Counted from the first letter of the stretch, positions 7,916 to 62,327 are shown. The stretch: DNA of 63,632 nt from Geosiphon pyriformis uo1 (GCA_016748015.1 JAAOMT010000649.1:73266-136897), one strand, 5' to 3'. A program made the numbers and translations. The notes: generated from the sequence alone by a model not told the origin.

Positions 7916-8089
7916 ATTCGGCGAATTTTTGAATATTAAATGGTTTAAGATATTGTGTAATTTGATTATTTTAATTTCTATATTATAAATTAAATTATTA
8001 ATTATATGATAATATTCAATAATTTAATTAAATAATAAGTGATAATTAAAATGATAATAATATATACTAATTAATATTAGAAATTAAAA

Positions 8090-16685: not shown

Positions 16686-17522
16686 ATGAAACGAAATTTT
16701 TATTTTGTAGTTGTTTTATTAGTTACGATTTCAATAATCAATGCTATTCCACTAGATTCTTCTACCTCAGCATCTCCTTCTACCTCAGAAACTCCTTCTA
16801 CCTCAGAAACTCCTTCTGGCTCAGAATCTCCTTCTGGCTCAGAATCTCCTTCTACCTCAGAAACTCCTTCTAGCTCAGAAACTCCTTCTGGCTCAGAATC
16901 TCCTTCTGGCTCAGAATCTCCTTCTGGCTCAGAATCTCCTTCTGGCTCAGAATCTCCTTGCTCAGAATCTCCTTCTAGCTCAGAAACTCCTTCTAGCTCA
17001 GAAACTCCTTCTGGCTCAGAATCTCCTTCTACCTCAGAAACTCCTTCTAGCTCAGAAACTCCTTCTGGCTCAGAAACTCCTTCTACATCAGCATCTCCTT
17101 CTACCTCAAAATCTCCTTCTACCTCAAAATCTCCTTCTACCTCACAATCTTTTACTCCTTTATTTGTACCATGCAATGCTGTTCCTCAGCCCGATTTTAT
17201 CGCTGTAACAATCGAACCTGCAGCTTTCGCTGCTGGAGAAAAAATAAAAATTATTGCTACTGGAATAGCAGCTAAAACTATCGACTCAGCCACGATTTCA
17301 GCTGGATTTTCTAATGCTCGAAATGAAGACATAAGTACTGTTACTAAAAGTTTTTGCAGTCATTTGAGAGGAGGACAAAGTTGTCCGGTTGGATCAGGAA
17401 TAAAATTCACAATATCAACCCATATAAAGGCACCACACTCTATCATTGGTACCGCTTTTAGTTTTAGTATTGTAGAAGCATCCACCAATGCTCCATTATT
17501 CTGTGCAGTGGCTCGTTTGTAA
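16686..17522 (+). CDS. Secreted ML-domain (MD-2/NPC2-like lipid recognition) protein with Ser/Pro/Thr/Glu-rich repeat stalk
   Basis: Intronless 278-aa ORF with signal peptide MKRNFYFVVVLLVTISIINA|IP. C-terminal ~120 aa has the ML pattern FVPC..VTIEP..AGE..I.ATG..FC......SCPV.SG..F......I.AP....LFCA with four Cys. Confidence 0.85.
   Translation: MKRNFYFVVVLLVTISIINAIPLDSSTSASPSTSETPSTSETPSGSESPSGSESPSTSETPSSSETPSGSESPSGSESPSGSESPSGSESPCSESPSSSETPSSSETPSGSESPSTSETPSSSETPSGSETPSTSASPSTSKSPSTSKSPSTSQSFTPLFVPCNAVPQPDFIAVTIEPAAFAAGEKIKIIATGIAAKTIDSATISAGFSNARNEDISTVTKSFCSHLRGGQSCPVGSGIKFTISTHIKAPHSIIGTAFSFSIVEASTNAPLFCAVARL
16761..17150 (+). repeat. Coding minisatellite, 22 x 18 bp (tct acc/ggc/agc tca gaa act/tct cct)
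   Basis: Encodes STSETP/SGSESP/SSSETP units; one unit has an in-frame 3-nt deletion (CSESP). Confidence 0.95.
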
Positions 17523-20295: not shown

Positions 20296-21706
20296 TTATT
20301 TAAACGAAGGCAAAAATTCACGACAATCTTTGAATGTGGTATTAAAATAAGGCCCAAAATGCACTGATGTTCCTCTTCCATCAGTCCCCGAGTTACAATT
20401 CTACAAAATGAGAATTAAATTAGTCCAGTGTCGCGTATATTCAAGTAATAAAACAATTTTTCTTTAACCTACCCTATTCTCTCCAGCTTTATTAAGATCA
20501 TTTGACCAGTACCCAGGGCACTGAAAAACATCATATGCCAAATTAAATTGATCAAGATTTGAATCTGGGCATTGACAATTCTTTGGTGTAATCCAATATT
20601 CCCTCTCGTGATGCCTGAAAATGTGATTACTCTGGAAATTTGACCTAAAGTTCGGAATAAAATCGTTTGAATGTGTAACACGGTAAACCTCCAATTCATG
20701 ATTAATATATTCTGCGAAAACAGTGCTTCCAATTCTTGGCTGACCAAAAGTGACTGCAATAAATTTCAATCCTGAACCAGCAACATCAGGAGAATTTAAA
20801 AGAAAAGCCTCCTTTATCTTAAGGGCTGTCAATAACGCATAAGCTATGATGTGTAAAGAAAATAAATGTATAAACTGAATTAAAGTAAAAAAATTATCTA
20901 TTGTTTTTTCTTTGAATACCTCCTCCAATTGCGTGTCCAGTGAAATAAACTTTAAAATTTGAAGTTTTAAAAGTGATCACTGCTTGCGTTATCACCATAA
21001 AAATTGATAACATTATGAAGAAGGCATCTTTATCCCATTCATTTTCCACATATCCCCCTTCAGTTTTGATATATTCAGTAGAAGCGGTGGTTCTTGCTGC
21101 CCATTCGTGAACAGGGATCTCAGGACCGTGAAAATAAAAAACTATTTTTTTGCTCTGATAATCAAGATGATATTTTGCTGATGTAAATTATAAGAGATTC
21201 AATAGCTAGCTTTAAATGATCATATGATAATATCAATAAAAATAATGGATGTTACCATATTTTTCTTCACCACCAATACGATTCTCTGGGGAAGAGTAGC
21301 AGTAAGCCATATTGGCAAAACGAGCCATTTCTGATAACATGGAAAAGGTTTCATTATTTTGCAATAGAGTTTTTGGTGGTGAATTTCCATCCTGAAAAGC
21401 TTGACCATCATTCATTGCAATTTTATCGGAATGAACCCTTCGTCTAAAATTTTGAGTGAACGCTTTTAGGTGTTGCTCAAGTTTTCCCTCAAAAAGATCT
21501 CGCTTTTCTTGCCCAAATTGGGCAAAAACTATTGACTGTCCTGTTATCAACAGCAAAGCAACAATAATCAAAGAGAAAATTTTGAGAGTAAAACTGGCAT
21601 TTCCTGATAGGTTATGCAATAGAGTCCACATTTTATAACAGGACAAAAGGAAGCTGATATTAGTGAAACAAGATATCTTAAATTTTGACGAAAGATGTCG
21701 ACACAT
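20296..21706 (-). CDS. Class-3 lipase-like protein 1 (4 exons; nucleophile Ser replaced by Ala)
   Basis: Hydrophobic N-terminal segment, MARFANMAYC, IVFYFHGP, YFTGHAIGG|intron, VTFGQPRIG, YRVTHSNDFIP, HHEREYWI, last exon NCNSGTDGRGTSVHFGPYF..FK*. GT-AG introns and open exons. The start may instead be ATG 21631. Confidence 0.88.
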
Positions 21707-27849: not shown

Positions 27850-29604
27850 ATGGAAACCGTTGAACTTAAAAGAAATCGTCCTTATGCTCATAAATGTCAA
27901 CCGACCATTAAAAACAATAAAACGAATTATTGTAACTATTGTAGAGCATGTTAGTTCATATTTTTTGAAAAGCTTTATAAAGATTTTTCAAGCGGCAACC
28001 AAGTAGTCGATGAAATAATCAAGAATCCAATTTATATTCCACCTAATAAAAAGAATAACTAATATGGGGAAGTTAATTATTACGAATGGATTCCATGGGA
28101 GCGTTTATCAAATAGCAACGAAATCGCTAGAGGAGGGTTCGGCACAATTTATAAAGCAACCTATATTGATGGATTAATTGATGAAAAAAGTATAAAACAT
28201 TATCATGATGAAATGGGATATGAAAGAAAAGGAGAAACGGAAGTAACAATAAAATTTATAAAGAACAGTGAAGAAGTGTTTAAAGAGGTAAACAATTATT
28301 ATTATTATTGTTGTTGCTATTATTATATAATTCATATTTAGCTATTATTTATTTATTTATTCATTTATTTGTATTATCTTTTAACTTAATTAATCATTTT
28401 TACCTTGTTGATAGTTACATATCCAAAGAGCTATGTTTATCAAGGGTGGATACCTGTATTATCTCTCTTTAATATATGGAATTACGCAAAACACTCAAAC
28501 ACTCGAGTATGGAATTGTGATGGAGTTTGCCAAACATGGAGATATGCGAAAATATTTATCTAGCAATTTTCATTCTACTAATTGGAGGCATAAATTACAA
28601 ACTGCGCGGGAAATAGCTAGAGGACTTGAATCTATTCATTCTTCTGGTATGGATCCTACAATTAAACGATTTAAATACTGCAATTTGCGACCTTGGCTTA
28701 TGTCAACCTAAAAACTATGAAACAAGAACAAGATCAGACTCGGAAATAGAAACAGAAACAATAGCAAAGAAAAAAATCAGAAAAAAAGCAAGAAAAAAAT
28801 CAAAATCAACAATGGCAACAGCAACGAAGAAAAATATATATGGAGTGATTCCATACATTCCACCAGAAGTTTCAAGAGGAGAAAACTTTACAATGGCTGG
28901 TGATATTTACAGTTTCGCCATGTTATTATGGGAATTAGCAACAGAAAAGCCTCCCTTTCATGATTGTTCTCATGACCACATTCTCCTGATGAATATTCTA
29001 GATGGTGCTAGACCTAAGATTACCTCTCCACTTATTCCACCTTGTATTGCCGAAATAATAGAAAAGTGTTGGGATGCTAATCCTAAAAATCGTCCTACTG
29101 CTCGAGAAGTTGAAGACAAGTTGTGGGAACATTCGTTGATTTATGAGCGGTTTACAAATAGGGAATCTACGGATGAGTCTGGAGATGAAGTGTCAATTAT
29201 AGAAGAGTCTAAAACTGAGAGTCCTGAAATAGTAGAATTTTTAGAATCAGATAAATACGTCAAAGATATGTTGAAGAAAGACTCGACAACAAATTATTTA
29301 ACAACGACAACGGTGACGCCATTGACGAAGATGAAAATTCATCCAGGAGCTATTTATACAAGTCGCGTTTTAAGTTTGCAAATGATTGATTTTTCTAAAG
29401 GTTAGTTTAACTAATTTAGAAGAGTTTTTGTATTGATTAATTCTTTGATATTATAATGATATTTTTGAAATTTACCTTCATTTACTTTTTAAAAGAATTA
29501 GTCTATTTGCCTAAAGGTAAGAAATTATCTTGTGTTTATGCTCTTGTTCTTGTTCAAAATTTATTTATTTATTTTACTATTTATTATATTTAGAAAATTC
29601 TTAA
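27850..29604 (+). pseudogene. Tyrosine-kinase-like (TKL) protein kinase pseudogene of the Glomeromycotina-expanded family
   Basis: SSGNQVVDEII, EWIPWERL..IARGGFGTIYKA, intron 28288-28414, YGITQ..YGIVMEFAKHGDMRKYL, ICDLGL, IYGVIPYIPPEV, DIYSFAMLLWEL, CWDANPKNRPTA, HPGAIYTSR. In-frame stops at 27952 (TAG) and 28060 (TAA); the HRD loop is deleted with a frameshift near 28652. The 3' micro-exons are tentative. Confidence 0.9.
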
Positions 29605-30239
29605 TAGATCTAATCGTGATTATTCAATTCATAATAACAATTATTAAAAACTCTAAAATAAGATATTTTTATAGAAGATAAATCTTAGATAACTTTATTA
29701 AATTATAAGTCTCAATCATTTCAATATGTTAAAATATATACTTTTTTAATTTATTCTATACTCGGAACTATAAAAATAAATTTTCTTTTCAAAAGCGAAT
29801 TAAATTGGGTTTAAATAATCAGATAAGTTAATTTAACTTTAACTTTATAAATAATTATTAAATCTCATTTTTTAAAATTGCGACTATTAAGGTTAAAATC
29901 GAGTACCAATATTAGTTCAGAATAAATTATAATCTTAAAATGTAAAAATTGTATTCTTGATTGTGTCATTAAAAGTTTTCATTTTTTTCTATTTATAAAT
30001 TAATAAATATTATATTAAATTAATATATGTTGTTTCATTTTCATAACTTTTACTATTACTTTTATCAATAGTACAATCATAATCATCTATATTATAATTA
30101 TTTTCATAATTATTAGAAGATGAATTATGTATTTTGTTTTCATGCTGAAAATGAATTTCAATAGTATTAATACTATTAGATTGTATATTTGAAAAATTGA
30201 AAAAAAAATTTTTCTCGGATTTATCCATTTTACTTGAAA

Positions 30240-33200
30240 TGCCACAATATTTGAATGATAAATGTACTGGAATCTGATAATAATAAGATTTTAAATTTTA
30301 AAAAACTGAAATAGAGAATAAAATAAATAGTATTAGTAATATGTCAAATATTAAGACCATAAATAATACTATTGTAGAAGAGACTAGTTATGCTAACCCA
30401 AATAAAATAAATAATTCTAAAAGCCATAAATAATGTGACTTTACAAAAAACTTGTACTAATTTTTATAATTTGAACAATTTGCCAAAACAGCTATTTTTT
30501 AATAATTTGAGTAATAATAAAATTCTAGAGCTTTTTTTTTAAGCTTGACAAATTAATGCTGCTAACTATATCTTTAATAAAAAAAAAGTTTTCAATTTAA
30601 TTATAAATTTTATTTAGACATCAATATTTCTGTTGTGACTAAGAAAAATCTGAATAAAAAGTTATTGATCAAGTAAATAGTTTTAGAAAAAAAGACTTCT
30701 ACTTTTTCAAAATTTTATGACAAAAAACTGTAATAAAATTTAAGAATGCTAATGTTGTCATGTTAGTTATTTTCAAGTGATCAGTTTTTATAAAAAAAAA
30801 TTTGGTTTACATAATTAAAGCTAATATTAACAAATAAACATAAACTACCAAAGATTGTTATTAAGCTTTTTTGTATACTTTATTAATAAATACAATTGCT
30901 TATAATCTTTTTGAATTTGTGGTTTTTTATAGTAGAAAACCTTGTGTTATTGCTTATAATCTGGTTTTTTATGTTTATGTAAGATGCACAACTATTTGTT
31001 TTAAGACAAAAAACTTTAAAATAATAATATTAATTTAATTTTGATTTTTAAGAATTTGAAATTAGGTTAGACTAATTTGTTTTTTTATGTTAGTTATAAA
31101 TAGACTTGTTATATTTTGTTAATATATATATTTAGTAGAAATTTTAATAACTATATTAAAAAAGATATTATAGTGTTTAATAAACAATAATTGGTATTTA
31201 TATATGCCAAATAACAAGTTTTTATTTTTTGTTTGGTTTTTTTTGGTAATAAAACTTGAACACAAATTGTTAAAAATATTTTATTTTATTTTATTTTTTG
31301 TTCTGTATTTTTTTTGGTATTGGTTTATTTTAAATATTAAATCTTTTTTGTTAGTGTTTAATACTATAAAATTAAAATTTACTAATCTGAAATACAGTTT
31401 TACTAATTTTACCAAACCAAATTAATAAGTTAATAAAGAAATTAAATATATTTAAACCAATAATTTTCTAATTTAATTTTGAATATAAGTTATTAATAAT
31501 TTTTTTATTGTAAGATTAAGTAAATAATTTAACAATAAAAAAAGATTTGAATACAGTTATTTATAGTAAACTATTGTTGTTTTAGATTTTTTGCAATTTA
31601 GAAAGCTTAAAATTAATATTAAAAATTTGTTAAAATCTTTTAAAGTCTGTTATAAAATATTTTAATAAAATTAAATAATATTGGTATTTTTCTAAGTTTT
31701 ACTAATTTTTTATTTTAATAAGTATTTATATTTAAAAAATTGCTATATATATTATAAAAGATATAAATATTTTTGTAAAACAAAACAATATTATGTATTA
31801 TTATAAAAATATAAACAATATAATTTTTATTTATTAAAACAAAACTTAAAAATAATATAAAATTATATATTTATATTAATCTAAATTAGAGTTTTTTGGG
31901 CTTTAAAATTGTGATAATTATAATTAATAATTTGGTTAAACATGTTTTTAAGATTTTAAAGATTCTAAATTAACTTTTTTTAATTTGTTAATAATTTTTT
32001 TAGTTATAATATTTGGTTTATATCTTGGTATGTCTTTTGATATAAATTTTGTTTAAGCATTAATTTTTTATAATTATTGCAATTAATTCAAATATTTTTG
32101 TAATTTTAAAAGGTAATTTTAATAAAAATAATATTAAAAATAATATTCATTCTATAAAATATTTTAATTTAAAATTAAATAACTCTTTTTTTAACTGTTT
32201 TATAAACAAAGTCTGATTTAATACAATTTTAAAAAGATTAAAAAAGTTATTAACTATATTATTAATAATAAATATTTGTTTATTATAGTTATTAAACAAT
32301 ATATTTATAATATTTTTGAGTTTTTTAATATTAATTATAAGTCTGTTTTAATTTTTATTAATTTGAATAAATTTTTAAATGCTTATTTTAATGTTAAATA
32401 CAAACAAGCCAATAAAAACCAATAAAAATACAATTTTAAAAATATTAATAATAATATAATTTAAAATTTAATAAAATTAAATCTAAAATAAATAAAATTA
32501 TAAAGAAAAAAGTAGTTATGACCAAATTTATTTTTTTTGGAATAAAACTAATATGTTTTTTGAATTATGTATATATAGTATATTTTCAAAAATTGTAAAA
32601 TAAATTAAATACAATAAGTTGCTAAATATAATTGAGAATTTGCTAAATAAATCAAACTGTTTGCTATTTTAAATAAACTTTAATAGTATTATAATAAGTT
32701 TATTATTGGGTTTTTATAAATTCATTAAATAAGTATTTGTTTAATAAGTTCATTTTTTTTAAGCTTTTTTTGATAAATTTCTGTAATTACAACAAATTAT
32801 ATATTCTTTATAATAATAATTTTTCAGTTTTAAAAGACATATTTATAAGATTTTTTATTTTTATTATTGGTTTAGTGATTAAAAATGCTTTAAAAAAATT
32901 AAAAAGTATAATTAATTTTATAATAACAAAATTAATAAAGTTAATAAGTTTTAACTTAACTAACAATTATATTATACAAAATAGTTTAAATTAAAGTGAA
33001 ATTTTTTTTATTTCTTTAACACCTTTTTTATAATCACTTTCTGTATAAAGTTAAAAAACATAAATGTTTATGTAAATATAAAATCGACTTTAAATTTGGT
33101 TTTAAAACTAAAAAAATTAAAACCAAAACTAATTTGACTTTTTATCTGGTTATTGGTATATTCATTAATAATACAATTAAAATTGAAAATAATAAAACTA

Positions 33201-33566
33201 TTATGCAATATATTTTAAATATAATTAATAAATTTTTTACTATTAATAATATCTTTATATATAATAACAAAACAATGACTATTTTTTTCAATTAAAGATC
33301 TAAAAAAGCAGTTTTATACAGTAGTAAATGACCAATATTTATTGTAAATTTCATAAATATTTGAGAATTTTATTATTAATAAACAGTTTATTTAAATTTA
33401 GTTTTAAAAAAATTAAAGTTAATATTAAATTTTTTACAAATATAATTTTAAGAAAAACTATTTTAAATAAACAATTTTTTTATTTAATTATAATAGTTTT
33501 ATAATTAATTATTAGTTACAAAACCCAATTGAGTTTTGTATTTTAAAGCATATATAATAGATAAAA
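30240..33566 (+). mobile_element. Old, almost fully AT-converted LINE copy, 5' part (ORF1 to mid-ORF2)
   Basis: Collinear with the young LINE: IVEETSYA (~30370), RKPCVIAYN..RCTTICF (~30930-31000), KKIA..start of APE (~31735), IGIFINNTI (= AGAFVDDTI, ~33150), IISYKTQLSFV (~33510). Confidence 0.85.
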
Positions 33567-33696
33567 AAAACTTTCTCTCATCAATCTCCTGACTATAGCA
33601 AGAGCAAGAAGTAAATCGATAGAATAGTTTTCTCTTTCTTCTTTTTCCCTCTTTTATCTTAAAGTTATTTCTTTCAATACACCCCTTTTTGTTAAT

Positions 33697-35631
33697 ATGG
33701 AACTGACAGGCTCTTCTGTTGGTGGTTCAGGTTCTGTTTCAACGGGTTTGAGGACCCATTCTGGTGTTAAATCTAAACGTTTGGCAAGTGCTCACTCACA
33801 TGGTGCATCCTACAAGAAACCTAAAAAGTCTGTTGCTGTTGGCAGTATGATCAATACGTTTACTGGTCTTCTTAGCTTGGGAGATTTGGGTAAAGCTAGT
33901 ACCAAACCTGCAGTGTCCTGGGGTAGCAATTTTGGTAATATAGCAAGCAGTGTAAGTGGTTTTTCGGATGCAGAAAATATGACAAACTTAGTAGCTGAAG
34001 AAACAAGCTATGCAGAATCTGGTGAGGATGATGACATAGATGAAGCTACACCGAGAAAAACACGCACCAGGACGTATGCTCTAGGCAACCCAATGAAGCA
34101 ATCTCTTTTCAACAATGTGAGTGATGACAATAGTGTGTTGGAACTCCCTCCTCGTATGCTTAGTGGTTCCAATCAATTGCTGTCACTCATGCTACATGTC
34201 TCGGAAATGTGAAGTTTTGATTCAACAAAGTTTTTCACACTTGATATTGAGCTTTCTGCAGTGTCTGGCAAATTAGTTAGTGACAAGTAAAAAAATTTTC
34301 TATTGAATTGATGGTTTTGGGGGGTGTCGACTTCCTTAAAATTTCTTGGAATCATCAGATCTTCATTTACTTTTGAGAATAGCTTGATAAAGGCAAGAAA
34401 GATGGCAGTCAGTGAGAAAATTTTGGTTAATAATAATGTTAAAAAAGCAAACAGCTGTTCAGATCAGGAGGTGATCATCAAGAAGATCTCAGTAAATCTT
34501 CTCAGATTGGCAGTAGAATCAGTTTTTTTTAAATTCAGTAAGATTGTGTCCATCAAGATGCAGCTGATTAGTCTTTGGCAAAAGACCCTGGTTGAATTCA
34601 AATCATCTGAAGTAGCCAGTCTGGTTGCATCCGAGTAGTTAGTTCTCATAGAAAAGGATTCAGTGCATGTAGCTTTGATGATTGGTGATAAACAAACATG
34701 AGTATTAAGAGATCAGCATTGGGCATTGTTTTATACTCTTCCAGTTGGCACCACTGCCCATGATCTTTCTAATTTGTTAAATTCTTATGGTGGGAAAACC
34801 AGCATAGTTGGCCGTAATCCAGTTATGTATGTTCGAGATAGGTGTGCTATTATTTGTTTTGCTGATAAAGCTTCCAAGTTGGCTGCAATTAGTTTAGTTC
34901 CGATCTTTAAGGGTGTGAGTTTGCATTGGGCTGGTCTTTCTTTGGCCTGTTGTGCTACATATAAACATTTTGGTCATGTTTCAAATATGTGCTCTATGGG
35001 TGGAAATTCTGGGAGATATGGTAGACGTGTGATTACTCCTCAGAATCAGACCCATTTGGTTGACATTTATAAAAAAAGGCAAGCACCAATCACTCATCCA
35101 GTTTCTTTTGGTGGTAAAACTTGGGCTCAGGTAGTTGGCAGGTTTTTTTCTCATGTGGTTTTCTTTGTTGTTTCTGGTGCGAAGTCATTTTTAGATGTCA
35201 AAAGTCTTTCAATGGATTTTAATTCTTTCATGGTCACAGGTCTGAATGATCACTTGGTGTTCTTGGAACACTCTTTAGAACTCTTGGCCGACCAGGTTTC
35301 TGGCATCTTGAAAAGATTGAGCTCTGCTGAATTGGTGCCTTTGTTCCTTGCTTCACTAACTTCCCCTCTTGTTGTCTTTGCTTCTTTGGATTTGAGTGCA
35401 AACTCAAACATGGTGTTAGATGCTCCACAGGTTTTTTCTTCTCCTTCTATCACAGTCATTGACAATGCAGCTTCTAATTTAGGTTCTAGTAGTTCAAAAA
35501 TCCTGACCACCAAAGTTGGTGGTTTGGAATCAAAAATGATGGCATTAGATGTAACAGTTGGTACAGTTTTGGCTAGATTGGATTTTTTGTGCTCTGAGTT
35601 GGGTTTGTTGTCTGTCTTTTCATCTCAATGA
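33697..35631 (+). pseudogene. LINE ORF1 (gag-like nucleic-acid-binding protein)
   Basis: Track ORFs 33697, 34324 and 34726 share a frame. Degenerate CCHC knuckle CATYKHFGHVSNMC (second Cys TGT->TAT) and C-terminal heptad repeats; several in-frame stops. Confidence 0.85.
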
Positions 35632-38600
35632 GTGGTTTGGTTTGGAAAATTGCTACTTGCAATGTTAGGGGCATAAACAATCCTGCAAAACAGGATGACA
35701 TTATTTGTTGACACAACGACATAAACAATTTGATTTCAATTTTTACAGAAACAAAGTTAAAAGAAAGGGTTCGTCCCTAGATCATCAACAAATTTGATGA
35801 TATAAGAGTGTTTACCTCTGGCTTGGATTCTAGTTATCTGGGTGCTGGTGTTGTGATCGTCATAAATTCTTCTTTGACAAGACATGTGTGCAAGATTTCT
35901 AAGGTGCCTGGTCAGCTCTTGTCTATTAAATTGCTGTTCAAAAATAAACTTTCAGTATCAATTTTGGGGCTCTATGCAGGCGCTTCTTTGGTGGTTTGGT
36001 TCTTTCAGGCTGGTAAGGTTAACTCTCTCATCATTAAGGCTGTTAATGAATCTTCTTTTGTCGTTCTTGGGGGTGATTTTAATGAAGATGGTTTGCGTAA
36101 AAGTGTGAGTTTTAGGAAGTGCCTTGATTTGAGACTAATCAATTCTCTGTTGAGTAGTCCAGTTGTGAAAAATCCTACTTGAGAAAATTCAAAGGGTGTG
36201 AAAAAGACAATTAATTATGTGTTTGTTTCTTCAAGTCTGGTCAGTACAATCATATATCGTAATGTTTTGGAGGTTGGCAAACATTATGATACAGATTACC
36301 AGACTGTCTCTGTGTCTATAGGCTTGGGTGGGCTTTTGGATGTGCAGCTGAACTTTCTTTGCAAACAGGCAAATAAGGATCATTGGAAGTTCGATTTTAA
36401 GAATGTTGATGAGATTAGATAGAACAATTTTAAAGGTGCCACATTAGCCAATGCTACAATGTTCTCAGATGAGTTTGCCACCTCTGTAAAGTTTTCGGAC
36501 TTGGATGCAATATGGAACATTGTTCACAAGATAATGATTCTCTTAGCTAGTGAAGTGTTTAAGAGGAAGTGGTTCAAAAGCTTTGATTATGTTTTCACCA
36601 AGGAATCTTTGAGATTTTACAAATTAAAGCTTTTGGTTTCCAAAATTGTCAAGGTCTCATGTGAGGAATGTGTAGCAAATTTTGAGTCTCTTATGGAACA
36701 TTGGGTTTCTTTGGACAATGATAGGGCTTTATTTGTGCAAGGTGTGATGGACTTTGGTGCTAACACTAATGGTGTTTATTCTGCTTTTTTTAGTACTAAG
36801 AGGTCTTATCGCACATCCAAGCTTACTGAATCATTGAGAGCTAAGAAAGCAAATATCAGGTCTGCTATAGATAAGAGGATGGAGAGTTTTGAAATGGATA
36901 AAGGTCACATGATCAGAAGTGTGCTGGAACAATCTTTTTGCAAGGTGGTTTTGGATCATTTGGTCGTGGGTAATGAGTTGGTTTTTGAGCCTAATTTGGT
37001 GAAATTTAAAGTGGATAATATTATAGAAGGATGGACCAGGAAGCGTGTAGTGGTCGATAATGTTTCTGATACTTGGTCTCGTCAGTACCAACTTTTGGAC
37101 TACATTTTTGATAAGGTCTTTCCTGAAGTGATGTGTGTGATTGATTTTGATAAGTTGCATCATGTGGTCTCTAATCTGCCTATTGGCAAAGCCACTGGTC
37201 TTTCAGGTATCTTTAATGACCTATGGAAACATTGTGATCAGTCAGTTTTGGATTTGCTTCTGGTCCTGTTAAATTCTTGTCTGTCTTGTGAATTGGTACC
37301 TGGTCCTTGGAAAGAGGCTTGGGTTTCAATGATTCCCAAGCCTTATAAGTGGGAGGGTGTTCTCATGAATACTTGTCCTATTGCTTTGATTGAAACAGCT
37401 TGCAAAATTCTCTTCAAGATTCTTTCAGATAGAATCTCATTTGCTTGCAGCTCTCATGATGTTCTACATGGTAACAATTTTTCAGTCTTAAAGGATATGA
37501 TAACTCAGTCATCTATTTTTGCTATTGGTTCAGTTATTGAAGACTCTCTGGAGAAAAACTGAGAGCTTTGGTTGGTTTTACAGAACATGTAAAAAGCTTA
37601 TGATTTGGTTGGCTAGAAGCACCTCAAGAGGAGTTTGGTTAGGATTAAGATGTGCAGCAAATTTATTCGGTTTTTTGGCAGTATTCATAAGAATTGCACC
37701 AACTGTGTGATGACAGATTTTGGTTTAACAGAAGACTATCATGTGCATGATAGCCTGAACCAAGAAGAAGTTTTTTTCCCCCTTTTGTGGCATATTTTTT
37801 ATAATCCTCTGTTGTGTAAAGTTAAGTGTCAGGGAAGTGTGTATGAGTATAGATTGAATTCTCATTTTGTTTCCAAAAGTGGTCATATCAAATCTCAGGC
37901 TGGGCTCTCTTCTTTTTTTGCTGCTGGTGCTTTTGTTAATGATATAATCTGAGTTGGTAGCAGTCAAAATGCTACTCAGCATATTCTCAATGTAGCTAGT
38001 AAATTTTTTTAAATTAATAACATTTCAATTAATAATGACAAAACAGTGGTCATTCCCATCAATAGCAGAGTCAGTGTTCTTTTTCTCTCCATTAGTGGCT
38101 CACCAATTTCCATCACCAAAAAGGGTGAATCTCATCAGTACTTGGGTATTTTTTTCTTGATTGAGGGTCTTTTAAAGCCTAGTTTGGCTAAGGCGAACTC
38201 AGATGTTTGTTTTTTCACCAATCTGGTCCTGAGAAAGGCAGTTTTGGATAAGCAATTTTTGTATCTGGTGTCAGCAGTTTTCTATTCTATAATTAGCTAT
38301 AGAATGCAGTTTTGCTTTGTTTCTGTTGGTATGTGCACCAAATGGGATGCTCTGATTCGTAAAGGCTTGAAACTTAAATCTGGTCTCCCACTGAATTTTT
38401 CTAGTAATACAATTCACCATCCTTCTTTTTATGGTTTGAAGTCCTTTTCACAGTCTCAGTCAGAATGTAAGTTTGCTTTGCTTGTTAGTTTTGCAAACTC
38501 TAGTGGGATTTTGGGGCATTTGTTCAGTCACAGATTTCATGACTTACAAGTTTTGTGTTGGCAACCAATCCATCTATTGATCTCTCCTACTCGTATTCGT

Positions 38601-40306
38601 GTCAGTGTTTCTAATAATTTCTTGGCTGGTGTGATTTCTATCTTTCTTGACTGCAGGCTGTCTTTGGGTGGTTCTTTGGCCAGTACTTTTTGGTTTCGTG
38701 GTGGGGTTTCTATGTCTGTTGTTCTTGGCAATTCTTTGTTTTTCAAGTTTTTGCCATCCCTTTGATGTTATGGCATTACTTTTGTGGACCAGCTTCGGGA
38801 TCATTGTGGTGATGTCTTTAGCTGGCTTATCTTTAAGTGGTGGAAGAGACTAGATTCTTGTGGTCTAGTCTCTGAGTGGTTCGAATGTTTAGTCAAGTTC
38901 CTTGTAACTTCCTGTTCTTCTCCCTCAGTCTTGGTTGGTGTTGGTCCTGTTGACATTTGTGGTTCTGATAATTTTATGTCTGTATGTAATCATCTTTCTT
39001 GGATTGGTGTTGATAGTTTGTCTGTATATACAAATGAGTCATTGAAAAATTTGGGCATAATTGGTTGTAAGGCTGGGGCTGCTGTCTTTTTTGAGGACAT
39101 TAACTTGAGTTTGGGTATTAGTGTTTGGAGTTTGGTGTCATCTACTTTGGCAGAATTACAGGCTATAACGTTGGCTCTAGAGTGCATACCTGTGGCTTGT
39201 TCTGTTTGTCTGTTTTCAGATAGTCAGGCGGCCTTGGATGCTTGTATGTCAGAGGTTAACTTGGGATATCCTGACTTTCACAATCAGTGTTGGGTTGAGC
39301 ACCAGCATATTAGGAATGTTATTCACAGTAAAAATTTAAGAGTTAGCTGGCACAAGGTTAAGAATCATTTTGGTGTGTTGGAGAATGATCGAGCTGATAG
39401 CATTGCTGATGCTGCAACTCTCTCTGATTGGTTTTTTTCTACTTATGTTGATGAACATTTTTTGTTGGCAGATGATAGTATTGTCTTTGGTAATTCTAGA
39501 CATTTTGTTCGAGACATTTTTCATGCTGTTTGTTGAGTGCATTAGGAGGTCGGTTCCAGTTCTGGGTTTCTACCTGGAAATTTGCACTTAGATATTGATT
39601 GGCCTGGTTCTTCCAGAATTTGGCATCCTGATTCGCATATGGCAACAGATTTCACTAGCAGGTGCACTGCTAACACTCGTACATACCTTATGAAGACTTT
39701 GCACCATCAGCTTCCTATGGTTGTTTGAAAGTGCGTTTATGATAGATGTTATCCTAGTGTTCTGTGTCTGTATTGTGATGAGGTAGAGGTGTCTGATCAT
39801 GTATTTTCTTGTGTGATTGATAATTCAGCTCATCATCAGGTTTTGGAATCCTGTATGTCTTCTTGGAAAATGCTTTTTGGTCTTTTTCTTTCTTCTTTAA
39901 GTGTATTGCAGCTGCTGTCAATCTGTGCTTCAGATTTCCTGGTTTTCTTGGCTCTTTACAAGAGTTTTGTTTTCAAAGAATGGTTTCAGGAGGCTGTTTT
40001 TGTCTTCCACGATCCCAAAGTTACTGGCATTAAGATTGCTAATTTTGTGTGCTTTTTTTGTGTCGCTTTTAGAAATGATATTTGGTTGGTCCATGCCAAG
40101 TATCGCGCATATATGAAAAAAATGGCCTGATCCTGGTGGATGGCTTGATTCTCATCTCGGTTTCTGGTTTAGTCTCGAGGTTTTCAGATGGTGTGGTTAA
40201 ATTGCTTGGTATTGCTGAAGCTTTTGGCATCTGTTTTGGCTTTCGCAAATCTTGTTTTTTTTTTTCAGGTATTGATGACCCGGTTTCTGTTAATATAATT
40301 GTGTAG
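35628..40306 (+). pseudogene. LINE ORF2: AP endonuclease, reverse transcriptase, RNase H, C-terminal Zn finger
   Basis: APE: IATCNVRGIN, TETKL, GGDFN, TINYVF, TDY. RT: KATGLSG, MIPKP, PIALIE, QNM*KAYD, SLNQEEVFFP, AFVND, YLGI. RNase H: VYTNESL, AELQAI, FSDSQAA, WHKVKNH..NDRAD. Zn finger: CLYCDEVEVSDHVFSC. One frame to ~40120, with about 13 premature stops. Confidence 0.95.
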
Positions 40307-40440
40307 TGTTGTTCTGACTGGTTCGAGTGGCTGGTCACATGTAGAAAATGCATGATTTATACTTAGTTTAGATCATTTCTTTGATGTATAGTTTTAAGTA
40401 GTGTTTGGACTTCACTCGTTAAATATTAATAATAAAAAAA

Positions 40441-42286
40441 ATAATAGATAAAATTTTTGATTTGTAAAAATTTAAAGTTTAAATCAACTTATTTAAGAAT
40501 TTTTTAATAGTAATATTTTTTACTTTTTATTATATAGTTTGAAATTATTTAAACAGATATAATCTGAAGATAAAATAACAAGTATAATAATATTTATAAA
40601 TACTTTTATATTTTTAACATTCTTTTTTTCTAAAGTCTAAGATTTACAAAATTAAATTAATTGTTATATTATTTTTTTTAGTTTTCTATAAAACTATTAA
40701 TATTATATTAAAACAATTTTTTAGTTAATATAACACATATTTATTCTAAATATAAAAACTTATTGTTTAATAAATTATTTAATGCTTTTTGTTTTAAAAA
40801 TAAAATCGAATTTTGAATGTTCTTAGTTATTTTGTTTATTATAGTGCAATTAAATTTCTGAAAAAATTTGGCATTGCTTTTACCAATAGCTTTAAATAGC
40901 ACTAATTTATGCTTTAATTAAAAGAATTTTTATTATTAAAAGCATTTTAATCTTAGAGACTTTGTTTTTATTTGGTTTAAAACTTTTATATTAATTATTA
41001 TTAATAAAAATTTTATAAATAAACTTTAAATATATTATTTTTAGATCTTATTTTATGTTTGTTTAATTTATATTTTTTTAATATAATTAAAATACTCTTA
41101 AATAAAACTGGTTTAGAAATTGTTTTTGTGTATACTAACAAATAAGTAAAAAATTTAGATTTTTGTAATATTATTTACAGTATTATTGCTTATTTTTTAG
41201 ATATTAATCTTAATATAAACATAAATATTTAGAATAAAATGTTTTTAACTTTGGCCAAATTACAAGCAATAGTATCAGTATTAGAATATATTTTTTTTTA
41301 ATTAGATTCCTTAAATATATAAATAGTCATATTAGTAATTAATATTCTCAATTTTTATAATAAATACTAAGTAAAAAAATAATATATCAGTAATATTATT
41401 AGCAATAAAAATTTAAGTATTTAATAACACAAAATAAAAAATTATTTTGGTATTGTTGACAATAATTATACTAATTTTTTGTGTACATTTTTATAGCTTT
41501 ACTTTTATTTTATCATTTAATATTAAAAAAATCTTTTGTGTTTAATAGTAAAATTATTTCTGAAAATGTCTGCTATTTTATAAAAACAGTTTTTAATTCT
41601 GTTTATTTTGTTGATTAAAAAGTTAATTGTATTAAAAAGGTTGTAAATAAATTTTTGGCTCATAATTTAATTTAACAAAATCTGTTTTAGTGTAGTATTT
41701 TAATAAACATTTGAGAAGTGATTTTATTGATTCAAGTTTTGTGTTTTTTAAGATATATTTTATCTAAGTGATTTGATTTATTGAACAAGTTATTAAAAGA
41801 TTGATAAAGTTGTCTATATGGCTATTGTCAAAAGTTTTGTCTTCAAAATTAATTCACTAAATTATTATTGATGTTTAGAAATACTTATGTAGTTGGAAGA
41901 ATATTGTGAACTTTGTTTGTAATTTGGCAATCTGTTATAAATTAAATATAAAACTGAGTATAAAAAAAAACAATCACCATAAATGGCACTGCTTTGTTTA
42001 ACACTATTGGTTTTTCAGTAGCTAAGTGTATATAAAATATGTATAAGATGTAGTTTGTTCAAAGTGCTATGGTTTATTTTGGCTATAAGTCTGTTTTATT
42101 ATTGCTTTCTGCTGATTTTTGGGTGTTTTTTAGTCCTTTGTTTAATATAAAAATTTAGTGTTGTTTTAATTGGTTTGAGTAGCTAATTACGTATAGTAAA
42201 TGCATAAGCCACACTTATTTTAGATTCCAGAGTTGATGTATTGTAATAGATAGTGGTTGAGCTACATTTATTAAAATAAAATAAAA
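40441..42286 (+). mobile_element. Old AT-converted LINE copy, 3' part (resumes exactly where the 5' part was interrupted)
   Basis: LICKNLKFKS (young copy LIRKGLKLKS), VYTNK*VKNL (RNase H), HKIKNYFGIVDN, AIVKSFVFK. The 3' UTR at 42155-42286 aligns with young 40303-40440. Confidence 0.88.
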
Positions 42287-43371
42287 GTCTTTTATAATTT
42301 ACAAAAGCTATATTAACACAAAGATATAATTTATATATTTTGTTTAGTTTATTATTTTTGAAATTTTTGTCTTTAAAAGTTAAATCTATATTTTTTATAC
42401 TTATATAAAAATTTTTTGGTTATATCAAAATTTTTTAATAAATTAAGCTTTTCTTAATTATGAGATACAATTAATTATTTAAGTAGCTCCCAAGAAATAA
42501 ATTAATAAAAAAATTGAGATATATAATTTTAAAATAAAAATCAATTCGCCTAGTTTTATAAATTAATATTCAAGAAAAAAACAGAAAATTAATACTAACC
42601 ATTAAAATTTTTTAACTAAATAATTTTTTATCTTAGTATATAGTGTCTTTTTAAAACTTTATTTCGTTTATGTTAAAAGTACATTTTAGTTGTTGTCTGG
42701 CTTTGTTCACTTTAAATTGGTTATTAAGAACAATATTAAATTGTTTTATATAAATTTTGTATTTTAAAAATTTTAAATACTGTTATCAAGTTTGAGCTTG
42801 TAAAATTGCTTTTTTTATTATACTTAAGATTGGAAAATCTTTTTTAACAATAGTAACAAGATTTTTAATTTTGTTAAAATGATTTTTAATTACTATGTTA
42901 ACCAATTTATTGTGATTAGTTTTTTTTAACTGATCCAAGATTACAAGCCATGGTAATTGCCTTTTATTTTTTCAAGAATACTATTTTCGAGTTTTAATAT
43001 AAATTATTTAAAAATTTAAAGCACCAAATAATAATTCGCGTTAAATTTGGCAAAGAATTTTCTTGAATTAGCCAAAATATTTAATAACTGCTTCTTTTGG
43101 TTGTTTTTTAAAAGTATTGAATTTGTTTTAAAGTTGATAATAAATTTTGGAATCTAAGTTTTTGATACCAAGTTAAGAATGTTTTTCAAAAAGAAGAAAG
43201 TTTTAAAAACTTTTTGCATTATTCCAACTATTGGCTTGTATAGCTTTTTTTTAGTATTTTTAATTTAAGTTTGTGCATTTTTCTTCCAATAAAGTTAATA
43301 AATTTGATAATATAAGATGTGTTTGACCATTTTCAGTTTATATTAGGTTCAGCTTCAGCTTCAGCTAGAAA

Positions 43372-48008: not shown

Positions 48009-50387
48009 ATGAGTGAATACGCGAACAACTTTGTCGAATCGGAACAAAATGAAGCGAAAGCTGAAAACTCCAAAGAAGCTGCAAATAAGTTGTTTCAGGG
48101 TTCGTTGGTCTTAAGGTCTTTTTGTGGATTAATTATGGCCTCAAGGAGAAAAATGATAAAACCGTATCCACTTGGAACTTATTAGCGAAAAAGTATGAAG
48201 CTGCAATTGAGAAATATACCGAGGCGATCAAATTTAACCCGAAAATGGCAGCATATTATGCCAACCGTTCTCTAGCTTACATGAAGACGGAAGCTTATGG
48301 TTATGCCGTTGCTGACGCGAACGCAGCTATAGAGGTGGAACCCTCTTACGTGAAGGTAGGGAAGCTAGCAATATATATTGAATAGAATATTTATGATCGA
48401 AGCTCGATCAGATTCTAAACGGAAGAACTCATAAGTTGATCTTTGTAATCATTTCATATATTAGGCATACTATCGACGAGCAGCTGCTAATATGGCAATG
48501 TGTAATTTTAAAGACGCACTTCGAGATTTTCGGATAGTGAGTTTCTTTTGAAACCTTCATCCAACTTCCAATATTAAAAACTCTCACTAACTTGGATACT
48601 TATTGAGGTGTCAAAAAAAGTACCTACAGATAAAGAGGCCAAAGCAAGGATGATCGAATGTGAAAGGATTGTGAGAAAAATAGAATTTGAAAAAGCAATA
48701 CAGGTATTTGCATAAGAAAATGTATGTGCGTATATAATGTTTTTCAATTCCTTTTTTTAATTATTTAAATCCGTTGTCACGATAGGTAGATGCATCAAAA
48801 AAGTGCCTCGTTGATTCTTTAGATATTTCCGCAATGAGTGAGTAGAAAACTTGCAATAACCAACAAAAAAAGATATATTGCTAAATTTTCCCAATGCATT
48901 TATGAAAGATATTGAAGCATCATATGTGGGACCCAGAATGACAGATGCAGGGATCTCGGAAGATTTTATTAAAGCAATGATGGAAGCTTTTAAAAACCAA
49001 AAACTAATTCACAGAGTATATGCATATAAGGTACGAACTTTTTACAATGTCATCTGGGTAGGGTTCACAACATGATTTAATTATCTAACCAATCAAACTA
49101 TTTCAAATTGATTTATTCCAAAAGATCATACAAGCTATAAGAAAGATGATGTTACGAGAATCTTCTTTGGTAGATGTTACAATACCACAGGACAAAACGT
49201 TAACAGTATGTGGAGATGTTCATGGTAGGGTTCTGTATTTGGAGTTCACAAAGATATCAACTTAATATCTTTAGAAGAATCACATGATTAATATCTAACT
49301 TTTGTTGAAATTCTTATCATAGGACAATACTATGATTTTATTCATATATTTGAAATGAATGGACTGCCTTCTGAAAAGAACATGTACTTGTTTAATGGCG
49401 ATTTTGTAGATAGAGGCTCTTTCAGCGTCGAGGTTATTTTGACCTTGTTTGCCTATAAATGGCTGTACCCGAACGCGATCTTTCTAACTCGTGGCAATCA
49501 CGAAACAGATGACATGAATAAGGTGTATGGTTTTGAGGGTGAAGTAAAGGCAAAATATTCCGATACTATGTTCACTCTATTTGCAGAAACTTTTGCTGCT
49601 TTACCGCTGGCCCACTTAGTTGGGCAAAAAATATTGGTTACACATGGAGGACTATTTAGTCGCGATGATGTTACTCTTGACGAAATCAGAAAAATCGATC
49701 GTTTTCAAAGAAAACCTGAATCACAAGGAATTATGTGCGAACTTCTTTGGTCCGGTACGTTGAACAGCGGTTTTTCCGACTCTATTAACATCCAAGTTCA
49801 ATATCTTTTTCATGAATTTCTAGATCCACAAGAAGCACTTGGACGCTCCCCAAGTAAACGAGGTGTTGGTATTCAATTTGGACCTGATATCACTGAAAAT
49901 TTTTTGAAACGAAACAATTTAGGTAAGTCTCGATCAATAATTTAATGATTCCATTGCTGATTTATATGATTCTGATCACTTTCTATATCTTCAAAGATCT
50001 ATTAATAAGGAGTCACGAGGTCAAAGAAAATGGATATTTGATAGAGCATAACGGAAAATGTATAACAGTATTTTCAGCGCCTAACTATTGGTATGTTTTC
50101 GGGTTCATCAACTCGTTTGGATTAATGCACTGCTAACCCGATGATTTGAAATGCCTAGTGACACGATTGGAAACAAGGGGGCATACATAAACATCTCGTC
50201 AGATCTCCAGTTAACATACAAGACATTTGAGGCTGTGGTAAGTTGAATTGTTTATTATTACATTTCAGCTCAACTACCAATAATACCTTTTCCCGATAAT
50301 ATTTCTCACTGGGTTCATATATTTTAGTCTCACCCTAATATACGACCTATGGCGTATGCAAATCAATTTGGTGGTCTTTTTTCTTAA
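48009..50387 (+). CDS. PPT1: Serine/threonine protein phosphatase 5 (TPR + PPP catalytic domain), multi-exon, intact
   Basis: TPRs ([28 protein letters not shown]), PPP motifs VCGDVHG|[19 protein letters not shown]|[25 protein letters not shown], and the PP5-specific C-terminus [18 protein letters not shown]. Canonical GT-AG introns. Confidence 0.97.
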
Positions 50388-52160: not shown

Positions 52161-53685
52161 CTATATTAAAAGCTTTTCATTTTCACAATATCCCATCATA
52201 TATCCGAAATATGGACCAAGACGTTGTACAAGGGGTTTTAAAGAATTTCGTACTGCATCCTGATTACATAACTTTAAAAACACGATATATTAATGAATGA
52301 ATATCGTAAATAATGATTAAATAATCAAATTACCTTCGGCTCATGCATTAACTTTGAAAAATAGTTTCCAAAGCAAACGTAAACTTCATCTGGGATATCA
52401 CAATTGCAAGAAGGATTGATCCAATACTCGTTGGTATGATGAAAAAAGTTGGGAAGTTTCGGGAGCTGTGTTATGTAATCATCAGAATAGGTCACTCGAA
52501 ATACTCTTGAATTTCCAAACTGCTTATTATCAATAAAGTTTTGATCGATTATAGTTTGTGATTCTGATCTCAATTCTGAATTTGATTCATCTAATATTTT
52601 CTTTTCAAGTAAAGAATCGACATATTCAGCGAAGAGTAAGTTTCCGATTCGCGGAGCGCCATAAGTATATACTTCAATTGTGAATGACCTTTTACGCAAA
52701 AAGCTTTCAATCTTTTTATAAATTCGTTTAAAATCCATTGCTCCAAATAAAGCCATGACTGAAAAAATAATTTTTTAATATAATTTTTTATTAAATTCAA
52801 AAAATTAAGGGATTGAAGTTTACCTCAATTTACTCACCACCACTCAAATAATGCCCAACAAAACAAATATCTGTTATTGCCATATTTCCCTTCAATACAT
52901 TAATCATTCGAGCTCTGAAAAGCAATCTTACGTTTAGATAATCTTCAAATAACTTCTTCTCCACCTTCGCATTTCTGACGTGTGGATACCCCATCTGAAA
53001 CTTAAAAAGTTTCCGCCAATGAATTCCTACGCGGCGAAAATAAACAATCAAAGTTGTTTCTTGGGTTTCAAAGCCGACTTCGTGACCGTGAATAATCAAA
53101 CATATATATAATCGGTAATTGATGAGGGTAACCAATAATTGGCTAAAGATTAAACTTTTAACGGTATTATATATTAAAATATAATTTACCAAATATTTGA
53201 TCATCTAATTTTTGCGCAGCATCTTTTAAGCAATATGCCTTATTGGCGTATTCTGCATAGTATTTTATTTTTATAAACTGTGGGCTGTCTGGTGGTAATA
53301 ATACTTTTTTCTGAGTCCTATTTTCATTTCGACCTGAGAAATTAATCCTTCGTAAATTTGAATAGGTATATGATTGTTTTGATACCCTTGAATTTTTGAA
53401 AATTGAATAATTTTGATCCGCTTCGATTGAAATATTTGTTAAATTAGAGATATGGATATTTGACCCAATAATTGAGGATTTCTTTAGATCTTTTTCTAAA
53501 CCAAAATGAATAGTATAATTACTCAAAGTGTAAATATATATTGTAAAAAATGGCAAGAAAATAAGAATGAAGAAAGAAAGTAAAAATTTTATTTGAAGAG
53601 GACAAAAAAAAATTTGAAATATATTTTTAGAAAATTTTGATGAAAAATTGAGAAATGAGAATTTATTATAATCATTTGGGAACAT
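52161..53685 (-). CDS. Class-3 lipase-like protein 3 (TM-anchored; Ser->Tyr, His->Arg); may be decaying
   Basis: N-terminal TM segment, YYAEYANKAYC, LIVYFR, CFVGHYLSG|intron, YTYGAPRIGN, FRVTYSDDYIT, HHTNEYWINPSCNC, last exon ..VQRLGPYFGYMMGYC..*. Confidence 0.8.
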
Positions 53686-61014: not shown

Positions 61015-62327
61015 ATGAAATACAAAACTTAATTAATATTTGTTTTTCCTATTTATATTTTAACTTTTGTTTGAAGATTGCTATTCATCAGTAGACTGAA
61101 AAAATGAGAAAAATGTTTAAGATGTAAATTTTTGAGATAAATGTCCGCAAGTATTACAGATTGACTTGTAACAAATAGTTTCGAAAATTGGTCAGTACAA
61201 AAGCAACTCGAAGAAAAGATTTAACAGTAATATGTATTAGTGATAGAGCTATATATTTTGTTCTTTGTGTCTACATTTTATTATTATTGGTACAGGTATG
61301 CTCTTATAACTTCATCTTGGGTGGTTTTTCTTATGTACAATTCCTCTTTCCGTTTACTAGAGCTAACTTGTTTCGATTTGTTATAAGAAAATAGTAGTCT
61401 GCGATACAGAAAAAAGGTGAAGATAATTAGCAAAGATAAATTTCAAATTGTTATTACATGAAAAAAATTTAATATGACCTATCGATTCCTTACCACCAAT
61501 ACTATTAAAAAGTCTGAAAATCTTATTAGTCATTTTCTTTGAAAGTTGGTCTTAGTGAGCTTATGCAGAAATTTGTCCTTAGTTTAGCTCTCGTATTAAA
61601 TGCATAGTCTAATAATAGCAACAAATCAGATCATGGCTAATTTTCTGATTAAAAACTAACTGATCTTTGTCGATTGTAGAAACGTCAGACTGTGAAATAA
61701 TAGAAGGATAACTGACTTCTTAACTTTTTATTGGGGCTATTTGCTAAGGATTTATCTGCAGAGGTAAGTTTATTAGCATACTTTTGTGGCAGGAGAATAA
61801 TTGTACTAGATCATTAAAAATATTTAAATTTCCCACAGCCCTGGCATTATTTTCAGCACTGCTAGTATTAAAATCAGATTTCAAGCCCAAAACTATTCAG
61901 ATTCTTACCTATGGTCAACCACGTGTGGGAAATAAAGGATTCGCTCAATATGTTAATCAAGAAATTCCAAACTTGTATCGTGTGATAAATGGCAAAGATA
62001 CTGTGGCGAATAGTCCCAGTAGATGTTCAACAGGATGGGTACATCATGAAAAAGAATATTGGATTGATCCTAATTCGAAAAAAACGTATAGTTGTGCTGG
62101 GGCGTTTGACGGCAGTGGAAGTTTTGTTGATGAGAGTCAAGTATCTCGCATCATATATACTGAATATACAATTCTAAATGGCCCAATGCGAATTTCTTAA
62201 TTTACTTTCTTCTTTTATTTAGAAATGCTTAAATGCTCCAGGTCAATATAATTCAGCATTGAATGCTGGTCCATATTTCTCTATCACAATGGGGAAAACT
62301 TGTCTGCCACCGGGAGGAAGGACGTGA
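61015..62327 (+). pseudogene. Class-3 lipase-like 5; 5' half decayed, last two exons open (His->Asn)
   Basis: Exon from 61839: ALALFSAL..LTYGQPRVGNKGFAQYVN..YRVINGKDTV..HHEKEYWI; last exon KCLNAPGQYNSALNAGPYFSITMG..T*. Upstream there are only stop-ridden relics (signal-peptide-like at 61015) and no readable GHSxG. Confidence 0.8.

What the first reader, a model, noticed from the sequence alone, without database searches (positions are those of the whole stretch)
33697..40306. RIP-like, two-stranded, non-CpG-restricted C->T/G->A hypermutation of repeats in a Glomeromycotina genome
Seen: this 6.9-kb LINE is structurally complete with only a few indels, yet has ~16 premature stops, each explicable by transitions at W or R positions. 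TGG->TAG: 34636, ~35778, 36420, ~37614, ~39543. TGG->TGA: ~34699, ~35709, 36180, 37950. CGA->TGA: 34210, 37560, 38763, 39534, ~39725. Two more read TAA. The ancestral W/R residues are inferred from motif context. Catalytic motifs changed the same way: FVDD->FVND, YTDGS->YTNES, KGH->KNH, QDM->QNM. TGG->TAG and TGG->TGA are CpA and CpC hits on the other strand, so CpG deamination alone cannot explain them. The nearby PP5 gene is intact and keeps many CpGs. Known: RIP (RID/DIM-2 dependent) is established in Pezizomycotina, with RIP-like signatures in some Basidiomycota; to my knowledge TE methylation described in Rhizophagus is mainly CpG. Inference: a repeat-targeted mutagenic genome defence (all-context 5mC plus deamination, or a deaminase) acts in this lineage. 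If it is tied to a sexual stage as RIP is, it would also bear on cryptic sex.
Basis: partly seen in the sequence, partly recalled or inferred. Interest (0 to 1): 0.88.

Follow-up and report, generated by a model that had tools for sequence, protein, structure and literature searches.

The report
Steady C-to-T erosion of Geosiphon transposons
In the soil fungus Geosiphon pyriformis, dead jumping-gene copies lose their cytosines almost only by C-to-T changes, at CpG and at other cytosines, but one change at a time rather than in the strand-coordinated bursts of the sexual RIP defence, so it looks like long-term wear from DNA methylation and says nothing about hidden sex.

Summary
The genome is Geosiphon pyriformis. 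The 6.9-kb LINE has intact ends and a 13-bp target-site duplication; 15 of its 16 premature stops arise by C>T/G>A only. Across 20 sibling copies Ti/Tv is 28, C>T hits both strands, CpG fastest (about 7-fold), and non-CpG C>T (0.10-0.18 per site) is about 50-100 times C>A. A linked gene duplicate (Ti/Tv 2.3) and between-subfamily divergence (2.6-3.7) lack the signature, so it is confined to inserted repeats. The RIP reading is not supported: no same-strand clusters (z 0.1, where simulated bursts give z 4.5-21), near-uniform load per copy, no CpA preference, negative RIP index. Non-CpG hits follow a graded Y-C-(A/C)-Y preference unlike the CpG sites. The element sits inside an older LINE that has already lost about 78% of its C/G, so the process is long-running. 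The genome has DNMT1, two DIM-2-like genes, UNG and TDG. Best reading: all-context repeat methylation with slow deamination (no methylome tested). The scan noted this signature before on other DNA of this genome; I found no paper reporting it for Glomeromycotina.

The parts
33554..33566 (+). 5' copy of the 13-bp target-site duplication (ATAATAGATAAAA), already AT-converted
33567..33696 (+). 5' untranslated end of the young LINE, shared with full-length siblings
   Evidence: L005, L003 match 33563-33689
33697..35631 (+). ORF1 (gag-like, decayed CCHC knuckle near 34950); three premature stops and a short frameshifted stretch near 34250-34320
35628..40130 (+). ORF2: AP endonuclease, reverse transcriptase, RNase H; open in the family ancestor, 13 premature stops in this copy
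   Evidence: RNase H PF00075 E 2.3e-10; relatives carry PF00078
40131..40440 (+). 3' end with A-rich tail
40441..40453 (+). 3' copy of the target-site duplication
29829..33553 (+). 5' part of an older LINE of the same lineage, eroded to about 15% GC, into which the young copy inserted
   Evidence: tblastn E 4e-22 and blastn E 5e-34; alignment score 2712 against 1325-1367 shuffled
40454..42408 (+). 3' part of the same older LINE (about 18% GC)
49355..49945 (+). control: open exon of the phosphatase gene; surrounding 47.5-50.5 kb keeps CpG (o/e 0.98)

Best explanation
After insertion, LINE copies fall into silenced chromatin and are cytosine-methylated: densely at CpG (DNMT1 type) and more lightly at other cytosines (one or both DIM-2-like enzymes, preferring Y-C-(A/C)-Y). 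Methylcytosines then turn into thymine one at a time, on either strand, and are fixed during ordinary growth over long periods, until a repeat is worn down to about 5-15% GC. Shown: spectrum, restriction to inserted repeats, independence of hits, neutrality, long duration, presence of the genes. Inferred: that the DNA is methylated in Geosiphon, which enzyme writes which context, that deamination is spontaneous, and that it needs no sexual stage.
For: C>T per site CpG 0.42-0.45 (0.83 per C after saturation correction), non-CpG 0.10-0.18, C>A 0.002, T>C 0.004-0.011. CG>TA doubles 0.062 observed against 0.058 expected from two independent constant-rate hits. No same-strand runs at CpG (z 0.14) or non-CpG (z 0.13); strand ratio homogeneous among copies (Q 16, df 19). 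Synonymous, missense and nonsense sites are hit equally (0.113, 0.119, 0.107), so hits are post-insertion. Flat along the element and unrelated to distance from CpG. Load tracks the flanks (non-CpG load against flank GC rho -0.63, p 0.009, n 16). Different flanking preference at CpG and non-CpG sites suggests two writers. Genes: DNMT1 type (L034), two BAH-containing DIM-2-like genes whose catalytic-motif exons hit PDB 9BAQ/9BAP first (that these entries are Neurospora DIM-2 is from memory). R. irregularis has 32.5-49.5% 5mC and all five DNMT types; CpG holds only 8-11% of cytosines in this window, so such levels would need non-CpG methylation (inference across species). Phycomyces TEs carry CG and CHH methylation with DIM2 and DNMT1 (PMC11258239).
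Against: No methylation data for Geosiphon were available. The rate relative to other changes is extreme (CpG C>T over 100 times T>C; from memory about 15 times in mammals), which spontaneous deamination explains only if replication errors are rare per unit time. The Y-C-(A/C)-Y preference matches no DIM-2 preference I could find (Neurospora CpT; Zymoseptoria CA). The flank correlation is confounded with subfamily and age. One of the three L032 exons searched hit DNMT1-type chains above 9BAQ.
Confidence: 0.55

Rival explanations
1. A DIM-2-like or other C5-methyltransferase acts as a direct mutator during vegetative growth, promoting C>T at its own preferred sites without processivity, as Dim2 does at CpA in mitotic Zymoseptoria tritici.
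For: Precedent: over tenfold more mutations, over 95% C>T, in mitosis with Dim2 (PMC8016269). Very high C>T relative to other changes; sequence preference at -1 and +2; two DIM-2-like paralogs plus a short standalone C5-MTase with intact PPCQ and ENV motifs.
Against: In Z. tritici CpG is spared and over 98% of hits are at CA; here CpG is fastest and CpA is not favoured. The preference is only about 3-fold (YCNY 0.196, RCNR 0.068). Sequence data alone cannot separate this from the best explanation.
Confidence: 0.2
2. Non-CpG cytosines are unmethylated; they deaminate to uracil and are poorly repaired inside silenced chromatin, while CpG decay is ordinary 5mC deamination.
For: All non-CpG contexts are hit at similar rates; pyrimidine-rich flanks are favoured; load follows the flanking domain.
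Against: UNG and TDG/MUG genes are present. Other damage-type changes (C>A about 0.001) are not raised in the same DNA.
Confidence: 0.12
3. Canonical premeiotic, homology-triggered RIP, implying a hidden sexual cycle.
For: Transition-only, both strands, confined to repeats; RID-type genes are reported in AM fungi.
Against: No same-strand clusters although the test detects 2 hits per 300-bp event (z 9) or 10 per element (z 4.5); copy-to-copy CV only 10%; CpA not preferred, composite RIP index -0.78; an inverted gene duplicate 32 kb away, about 1.1 kb aligned at 89-90% identity, has Ti/Tv 2.3 and intact CpG (expected 21; binomial p 7e-13); the short MTase did not retrieve any named RID/Masc1 protein.
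Confidence: 0.05
4. A DNA deaminase (AID/APOBEC or DddA type) or UV light causes the non-CpG changes; both favour a 5' pyrimidine, and Geosiphon bladders live in light.
For: 5' T and C raise the rate (T 0.178, C 0.112, A and G 0.08).
Against: CC>TT doublets are not enriched (0.87-fold); no clusters; equal on both strands, so not editing of the cDNA; TC bias only about 2-fold; AID motif WRC below average; UV would not spare genes; no hit for PF14441, PF14440, PF14428, PF08210 (weak negatives in a spliced genome).
Confidence: 0.05
5. Genome-wide AT-biased neutral decay or assembly error.
For: The genome is AT-rich; some intergenic stretches are 14-19% GC with CpG kept.
Against: Fourfold-degenerate sites of intact genes are 31% GC (implied bias 2.3) against an equilibrium of 4-10% GC from LINE rates; gene duplicate Ti/Tv 2.3; separately assembled contigs agree letter for letter.
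Confidence: 0.03

Closest known systems
Dim2-dependent mitotic C>T mutation of TEs in Zymoseptoria tritici (PMC8016269)
   Same: Repeat-confined, almost pure C>T, non-CpG sites hit, DIM-2-type gene present, no sexual stage needed.
   Different: There over 98% of hits are at CpA and CpG is spared; here CpG is fastest and non-CpG follows Y-C-(A/C)-Y across CpA, CpC and CpT. The enzyme link is shown there, inferred here.
RIP of Neurospora crassa and other Pezizomycotina (PMC7296669, PMC12543289)
   Same: C:G>T:A only, both strands over time, destroys TE reading frames, ends in AT-rich islands.
   Different: No same-strand clusters, no CpA preference, negative RIP index, uniform load among copies, linked gene duplicate spared.
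CpG/TpCpG hypermutation of TEs in basidiomycetes and Tuber, ascribed to methylation and deamination (PMC4352252, PMC3318451)
   Same: CpG is the main target; methylation followed by deamination is the proposed cause.
   Different: Here about half or more of the hits are outside CpG, Ti/Tv is 17-48 within subfamilies, and the 5' T preference is at non-CpG sites, not at CpG.
TE methylation in Rhizophagus irregularis and Phycomyces (PMC8647823, PMC8298701, PMC11258239)
   Same: Related fungi with heavily methylated TEs, DNMT1 plus DIM-2, very high total 5mC or CHH methylation on TEs.
   Different: In the passages I read, those papers describe the mark and not its mutational outcome; RIP signatures were reported absent from Gigaspora and Mucoromycotina.

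Membership tests
RIP | C:G>T:A transitions in large excess in repeats | tested here: met
   Ti/Tv 28 over 20 copies; 17-48 in within-subfamily pairs
RIP | Hits clustered on one strand per round | tested here: not met
   z 0.13 and 0.14; simulated bursts z 4.5-21; reference
RIP | CpA preference, positive composite index | tested here: not met
   CpG >> CpC >= CpA ~ CpT; index -0.78
RIP | Triggered by DNA homology of any duplication, strongest when linked | tested here: not met
   One linked gene duplicate, Ti/Tv 2.3, CpG intact; a single case, and it may be under selection
RIP | RID/Masc1 methyltransferase present | tested here: inconclusive
   Short MTase KAG9301204.1 forms a Glomeromycota clade with distant Mycena and bacterial kin, no named RID hit; RID is reported for AM fungi; no RID reference sequence was at hand for a tree
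RIP | Acts in the premeiotic sexual stage | not testable with these tools
   Needs crosses or progeny
Methylation-linked repeat mutation (Dim2/DNMT1 type) | DIM-2 and DNMT1 type genes with intact catalytic motifs | tested here: met
   L032 and L036 carry BAH, motif I, GSPCQ and ENV; L034 DNMT1 type; exon-level evidence, expression not tested
Methylation-linked repeat mutation (Dim2/DNMT1 type) | Mutation confined to silenced repeats, genes spared | tested here: met
   controls are few
Methylation-linked repeat mutation (Dim2/DNMT1 type) | 5mC present at the mutated contexts | not testable with these tools
   No methylome or raw reads served
AID/APOBEC or DddA editing | Strong motif, clusters or strand bias, deaminase gene | tested here: not met
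   gene searches are weak negatives
LINE (non-LTR retrotransposon with APE, RT and RNase H) | ORF1 + ORF2 domain order, A-rich tail, target-site duplication, no LTRs | tested here: met
   clade not determined

The most novel reading that the evidence does not exclude
Geosiphon has an enzyme-driven, non-processive, sex-independent mutator of silenced DNA, run by a duplicated DIM-2 or by the short Glomeromycota C5-methyltransferase, with its own Y-C-(A/C)-Y specificity. It would be a mutagenic genome defence outside Dikarya that standard RIP indices cannot see.
Probability: 0.22. Interest if true: 0.8.

Novelty: new variant of a known kind. Interest (0 to 1): 0.55.

Why it matters
Surveys confine repeat-directed mutation to ascomycetes and to CpA (PMC12543289) and report no RIP signature in AM fungi. 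This signature is strong yet scores negative on RIP indices, so such screens would miss it. It shows how a TE-rich Glomeromycotina genome disables its transposons and builds AT-rich islands, warns that TE ages and gene models from such repeats are distorted (over 200 predicted Geosiphon proteins match pieces of this LINE family), and gives a sharp prediction for a methylome. It should not be used as evidence of cryptic sex.

Tried and rejected
I did not fetch more of this genome by another tool, so controls are limited to DNA already held, and the 15 younger copies at 93-94% could not be read. Cross-species control failed: both LINE protein searches listed only Geosiphon and the metagenome scan confirmed nothing, so whether other AM fungi share the signature is untested. 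A first same-strand signal at CpG (z 3.9) was an artefact of shuffling the C and G of one CpG separately; it vanished with the dinucleotide as unit. UV rejected (no CC>TT excess). A restriction-type motif for the short MTase rejected (CCWGG, GGCC, AGCT, GCNGC, GATC do not stand out from the general trend). My idea that the short MTase is special to Geosiphon and Ambispora was wrong: it is also in Gigasporaceae and Entrophospora. Loss of uracil repair genes rejected at the gene-presence level. Two papers (PMC6533610, PMC5607778) were not held.

Full report
Source and element. The window lies on a 128.3-Mb, 792-contig assembly, matching Geosiphon pyriformis (129 Mb, 795 scaffolds); every protein relative is named Geosiphon pyriformis and one lies on a contig of this contig's length. 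The feature is a LINE running 33567-40440 between two copies of a 13-bp target-site duplication, with ORF1 and an ORF2 of endonuclease, reverse transcriptase and RNase H. At least 28 other loci hold relatives; 20 distinct copies form the main family at 84-89% identity on a star-like tree with terminal branches of 0.07-0.10.

Check of the observation. The family ancestor has an open ORF2. Against it the window copy has 16 premature stops, 15 by C>T/G>A only (9 Trp, 6 Arg codons) and one from His with a transversion; the four motif changes are G>A. Over all copies 234 of 244 ORF2 stops are transition-only, 124 from TGG. Contigs assembled separately from a public run agree with the window letter for letter where they lie; this is probably the same sample, so it excludes assembly error but is not a biological replicate.

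Spectrum. Ti/Tv is 28 for the family and 25 for this copy. C>T per site is 0.42-0.45 at CpG, 0.10-0.13 at CpA, 0.12-0.18 at CpC and 0.10-0.11 at CpT, on both strands, against 0.002 for C>A. Within subfamilies T>C is 0.004-0.011. Corrected for saturation, CpG mutates at 0.83 per C, about 7 times the non-CpG rate. Ancestor-free pair counts give the same picture: Ti/Tv 17-48 within subfamilies, with 10-32 non-CpG transitions per transversion. Non-CpG hits follow a graded preference, strongest at -1 (T > C > A, G) and +2 (T, C > G, A): TCAC, TCAT, CCCT 0.27; YCNY 0.196; RCNR 0.068. CpG sites do not share the 5' T preference.

Is it confined to repeats? Divergence between subfamilies, which includes the active lineage, has Ti/Tv 2.6-3.7, and synonymous, missense and nonsense sites are hit alike within the family: the excess falls on dead, inserted copies. 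An inverted duplicate of a methyltransferase gene 32 kb from its parent has 50 transitions and 22 transversions with no CpG excess; LINE rates predict Ti/Tv 21 (p 7e-13). Fourfold-degenerate sites of intact genes are 31% GC, while LINE non-CpG rates imply an equilibrium of 4-10%. The repeat-specific excess at non-CpG sites is thus roughly 4- to 10-fold (inference). These controls are few and not strictly neutral; a genome-wide sample could not be fetched.

Is it RIP? In Neurospora about 92% of RIP clusters are on one strand and the median distance between hits is 41 bp. Here consecutive hits share a strand exactly as often as in shuffles (z 0.13 non-CpG, 0.14 CpG), pair enrichment at 16-500 bp is 0.99-1.01, and simulations show the test would detect 2 hits per 300-bp event or 10 per element. 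Strand ratios are homogeneous among copies and load varies by only 10%. CG>TA doubles match two independent constant-rate hits. CpA is enriched, not depleted, and the composite RIP index is -0.78. CC>TT doublets are not enriched, which argues against UV. The process behaves as single, independent events.

Duration and end state. The AT-rich flanks are an older LINE of the same lineage split by the young copy (lead from note s1-535221). About 78% of its ancestral C/G that are unchanged or changed by transition are converted, with the same ranking (YCNY 0.83, other 0.77, RCNR 0.65); it also shows 19% transversions, part age, part lineage distance and part alignment noise. Both copies of the target-site duplication are identical and AT-converted relative to the family sequence at that place, so the host was eroded before the young copy arrived (inference), and the young copy has since lost about 12% of its non-CpG and over 80% of its CpG sites. 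Among 16 copies, load is higher where flanks are AT-richer (rho -0.63), in line with a chromatin-domain effect but confounded with age.

Machinery. The genome encodes a DNMT1-type gene, two BAH-containing DIM-2-like genes, two DNMT2-type genes and a short standalone C5-methyltransferase with a linked duplicate. The short enzyme belongs to a Glomeromycota clade (Ambispora, Entrophospora, Gigasporaceae) with distant Mycena and bacterial relatives; I could not tie it to RID. UNG and TDG/MUG are present. Four deaminase families gave no hit, a weak negative.

Mechanism. Most likely (0.55): all-context methylation of silenced repeats, dense at CpG and lighter elsewhere, followed by slow deamination fixed in vegetative growth. 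R. irregularis has 32.5-49.5% of cytosines methylated, more than CpG alone could hold if CpG is about a tenth of cytosines as in this window, and Phycomyces TEs carry CHH methylation. An enzyme-promoted version like Zymoseptoria Dim2 cannot be excluded (0.2), nor poor repair of uracil in silenced chromatin (0.12). Canonical RIP is unlikely (0.05).

Novelty. It works like methylation-linked repeat mutation known from Zymoseptoria, basidiomycetes and Tuber, with a different context and greater reach. It fails three tested features of RIP. I found no paper describing it in Glomeromycotina (the library lacks most subscription papers, and I did not read the Geosiphon genome paper). Earlier notes of this scan describe the same signature on other DNA of this genome; the strand, doublet, context, control and machinery tests above are my own. 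Verdict: real, new variant of a known kind, interest 0.55; no evidence for cryptic sex.

Noticed in passing
window 29829-33553 and 40454-42408: Older LINE of the same lineage and strand, eroded to 15-18% GC, hosting the young copy; shows the end state of the process.
   Followed up: yes
L031:1462-2614 (G000:C657 about 788-789 kb; KAG9301204.1): Short, intron-containing C5-methyltransferase without BAH domains, conserved across Glomeromycota, nearest other kin Mycena and bacteria; a diverged inverted duplicate lies 32 kb away (L035). Function not known to me.
   Followed up: partly
L032 (C702) and L036 (C666): Two DIM-2-like paralogs, both with intact motif I, GSPCQ and ENV; two DNMT2-type genes as well (L037/L038, L039).
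   Followed up: partly
L007-L017, L020-L029 alignments: Many copies begin matching exactly at the ORF1/ORF2 junction (window about 35620), and some carry a different ORF1 upstream, suggesting ORF1 exchange between subfamilies.
   Followed up: no
L028 subfamily: A younger subfamily of about 15 copies at 93-94% identity, higher GC and CpG, already Ti/Tv 21 in the one pair I could read.
   Followed up: partly
window 1500-8000: 6.5-kb stretch with CpG o/e 0.07, 23% GC and strong GC skew; probably another eroded element of a different family.
   Followed up: no
window 16686-17522, 20464-20928, 28626-29405, 52325-52756, 61784-62200: ML-domain gene with an internal tandem repeat, three Lipase_3 exons and a kinase; all in CpG-intact regions.
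   Followed up: no
Over 200 predicted 'hypothetical proteins' of the Geosiphon annotation match pieces of this decayed LINE family.
   Followed up: no
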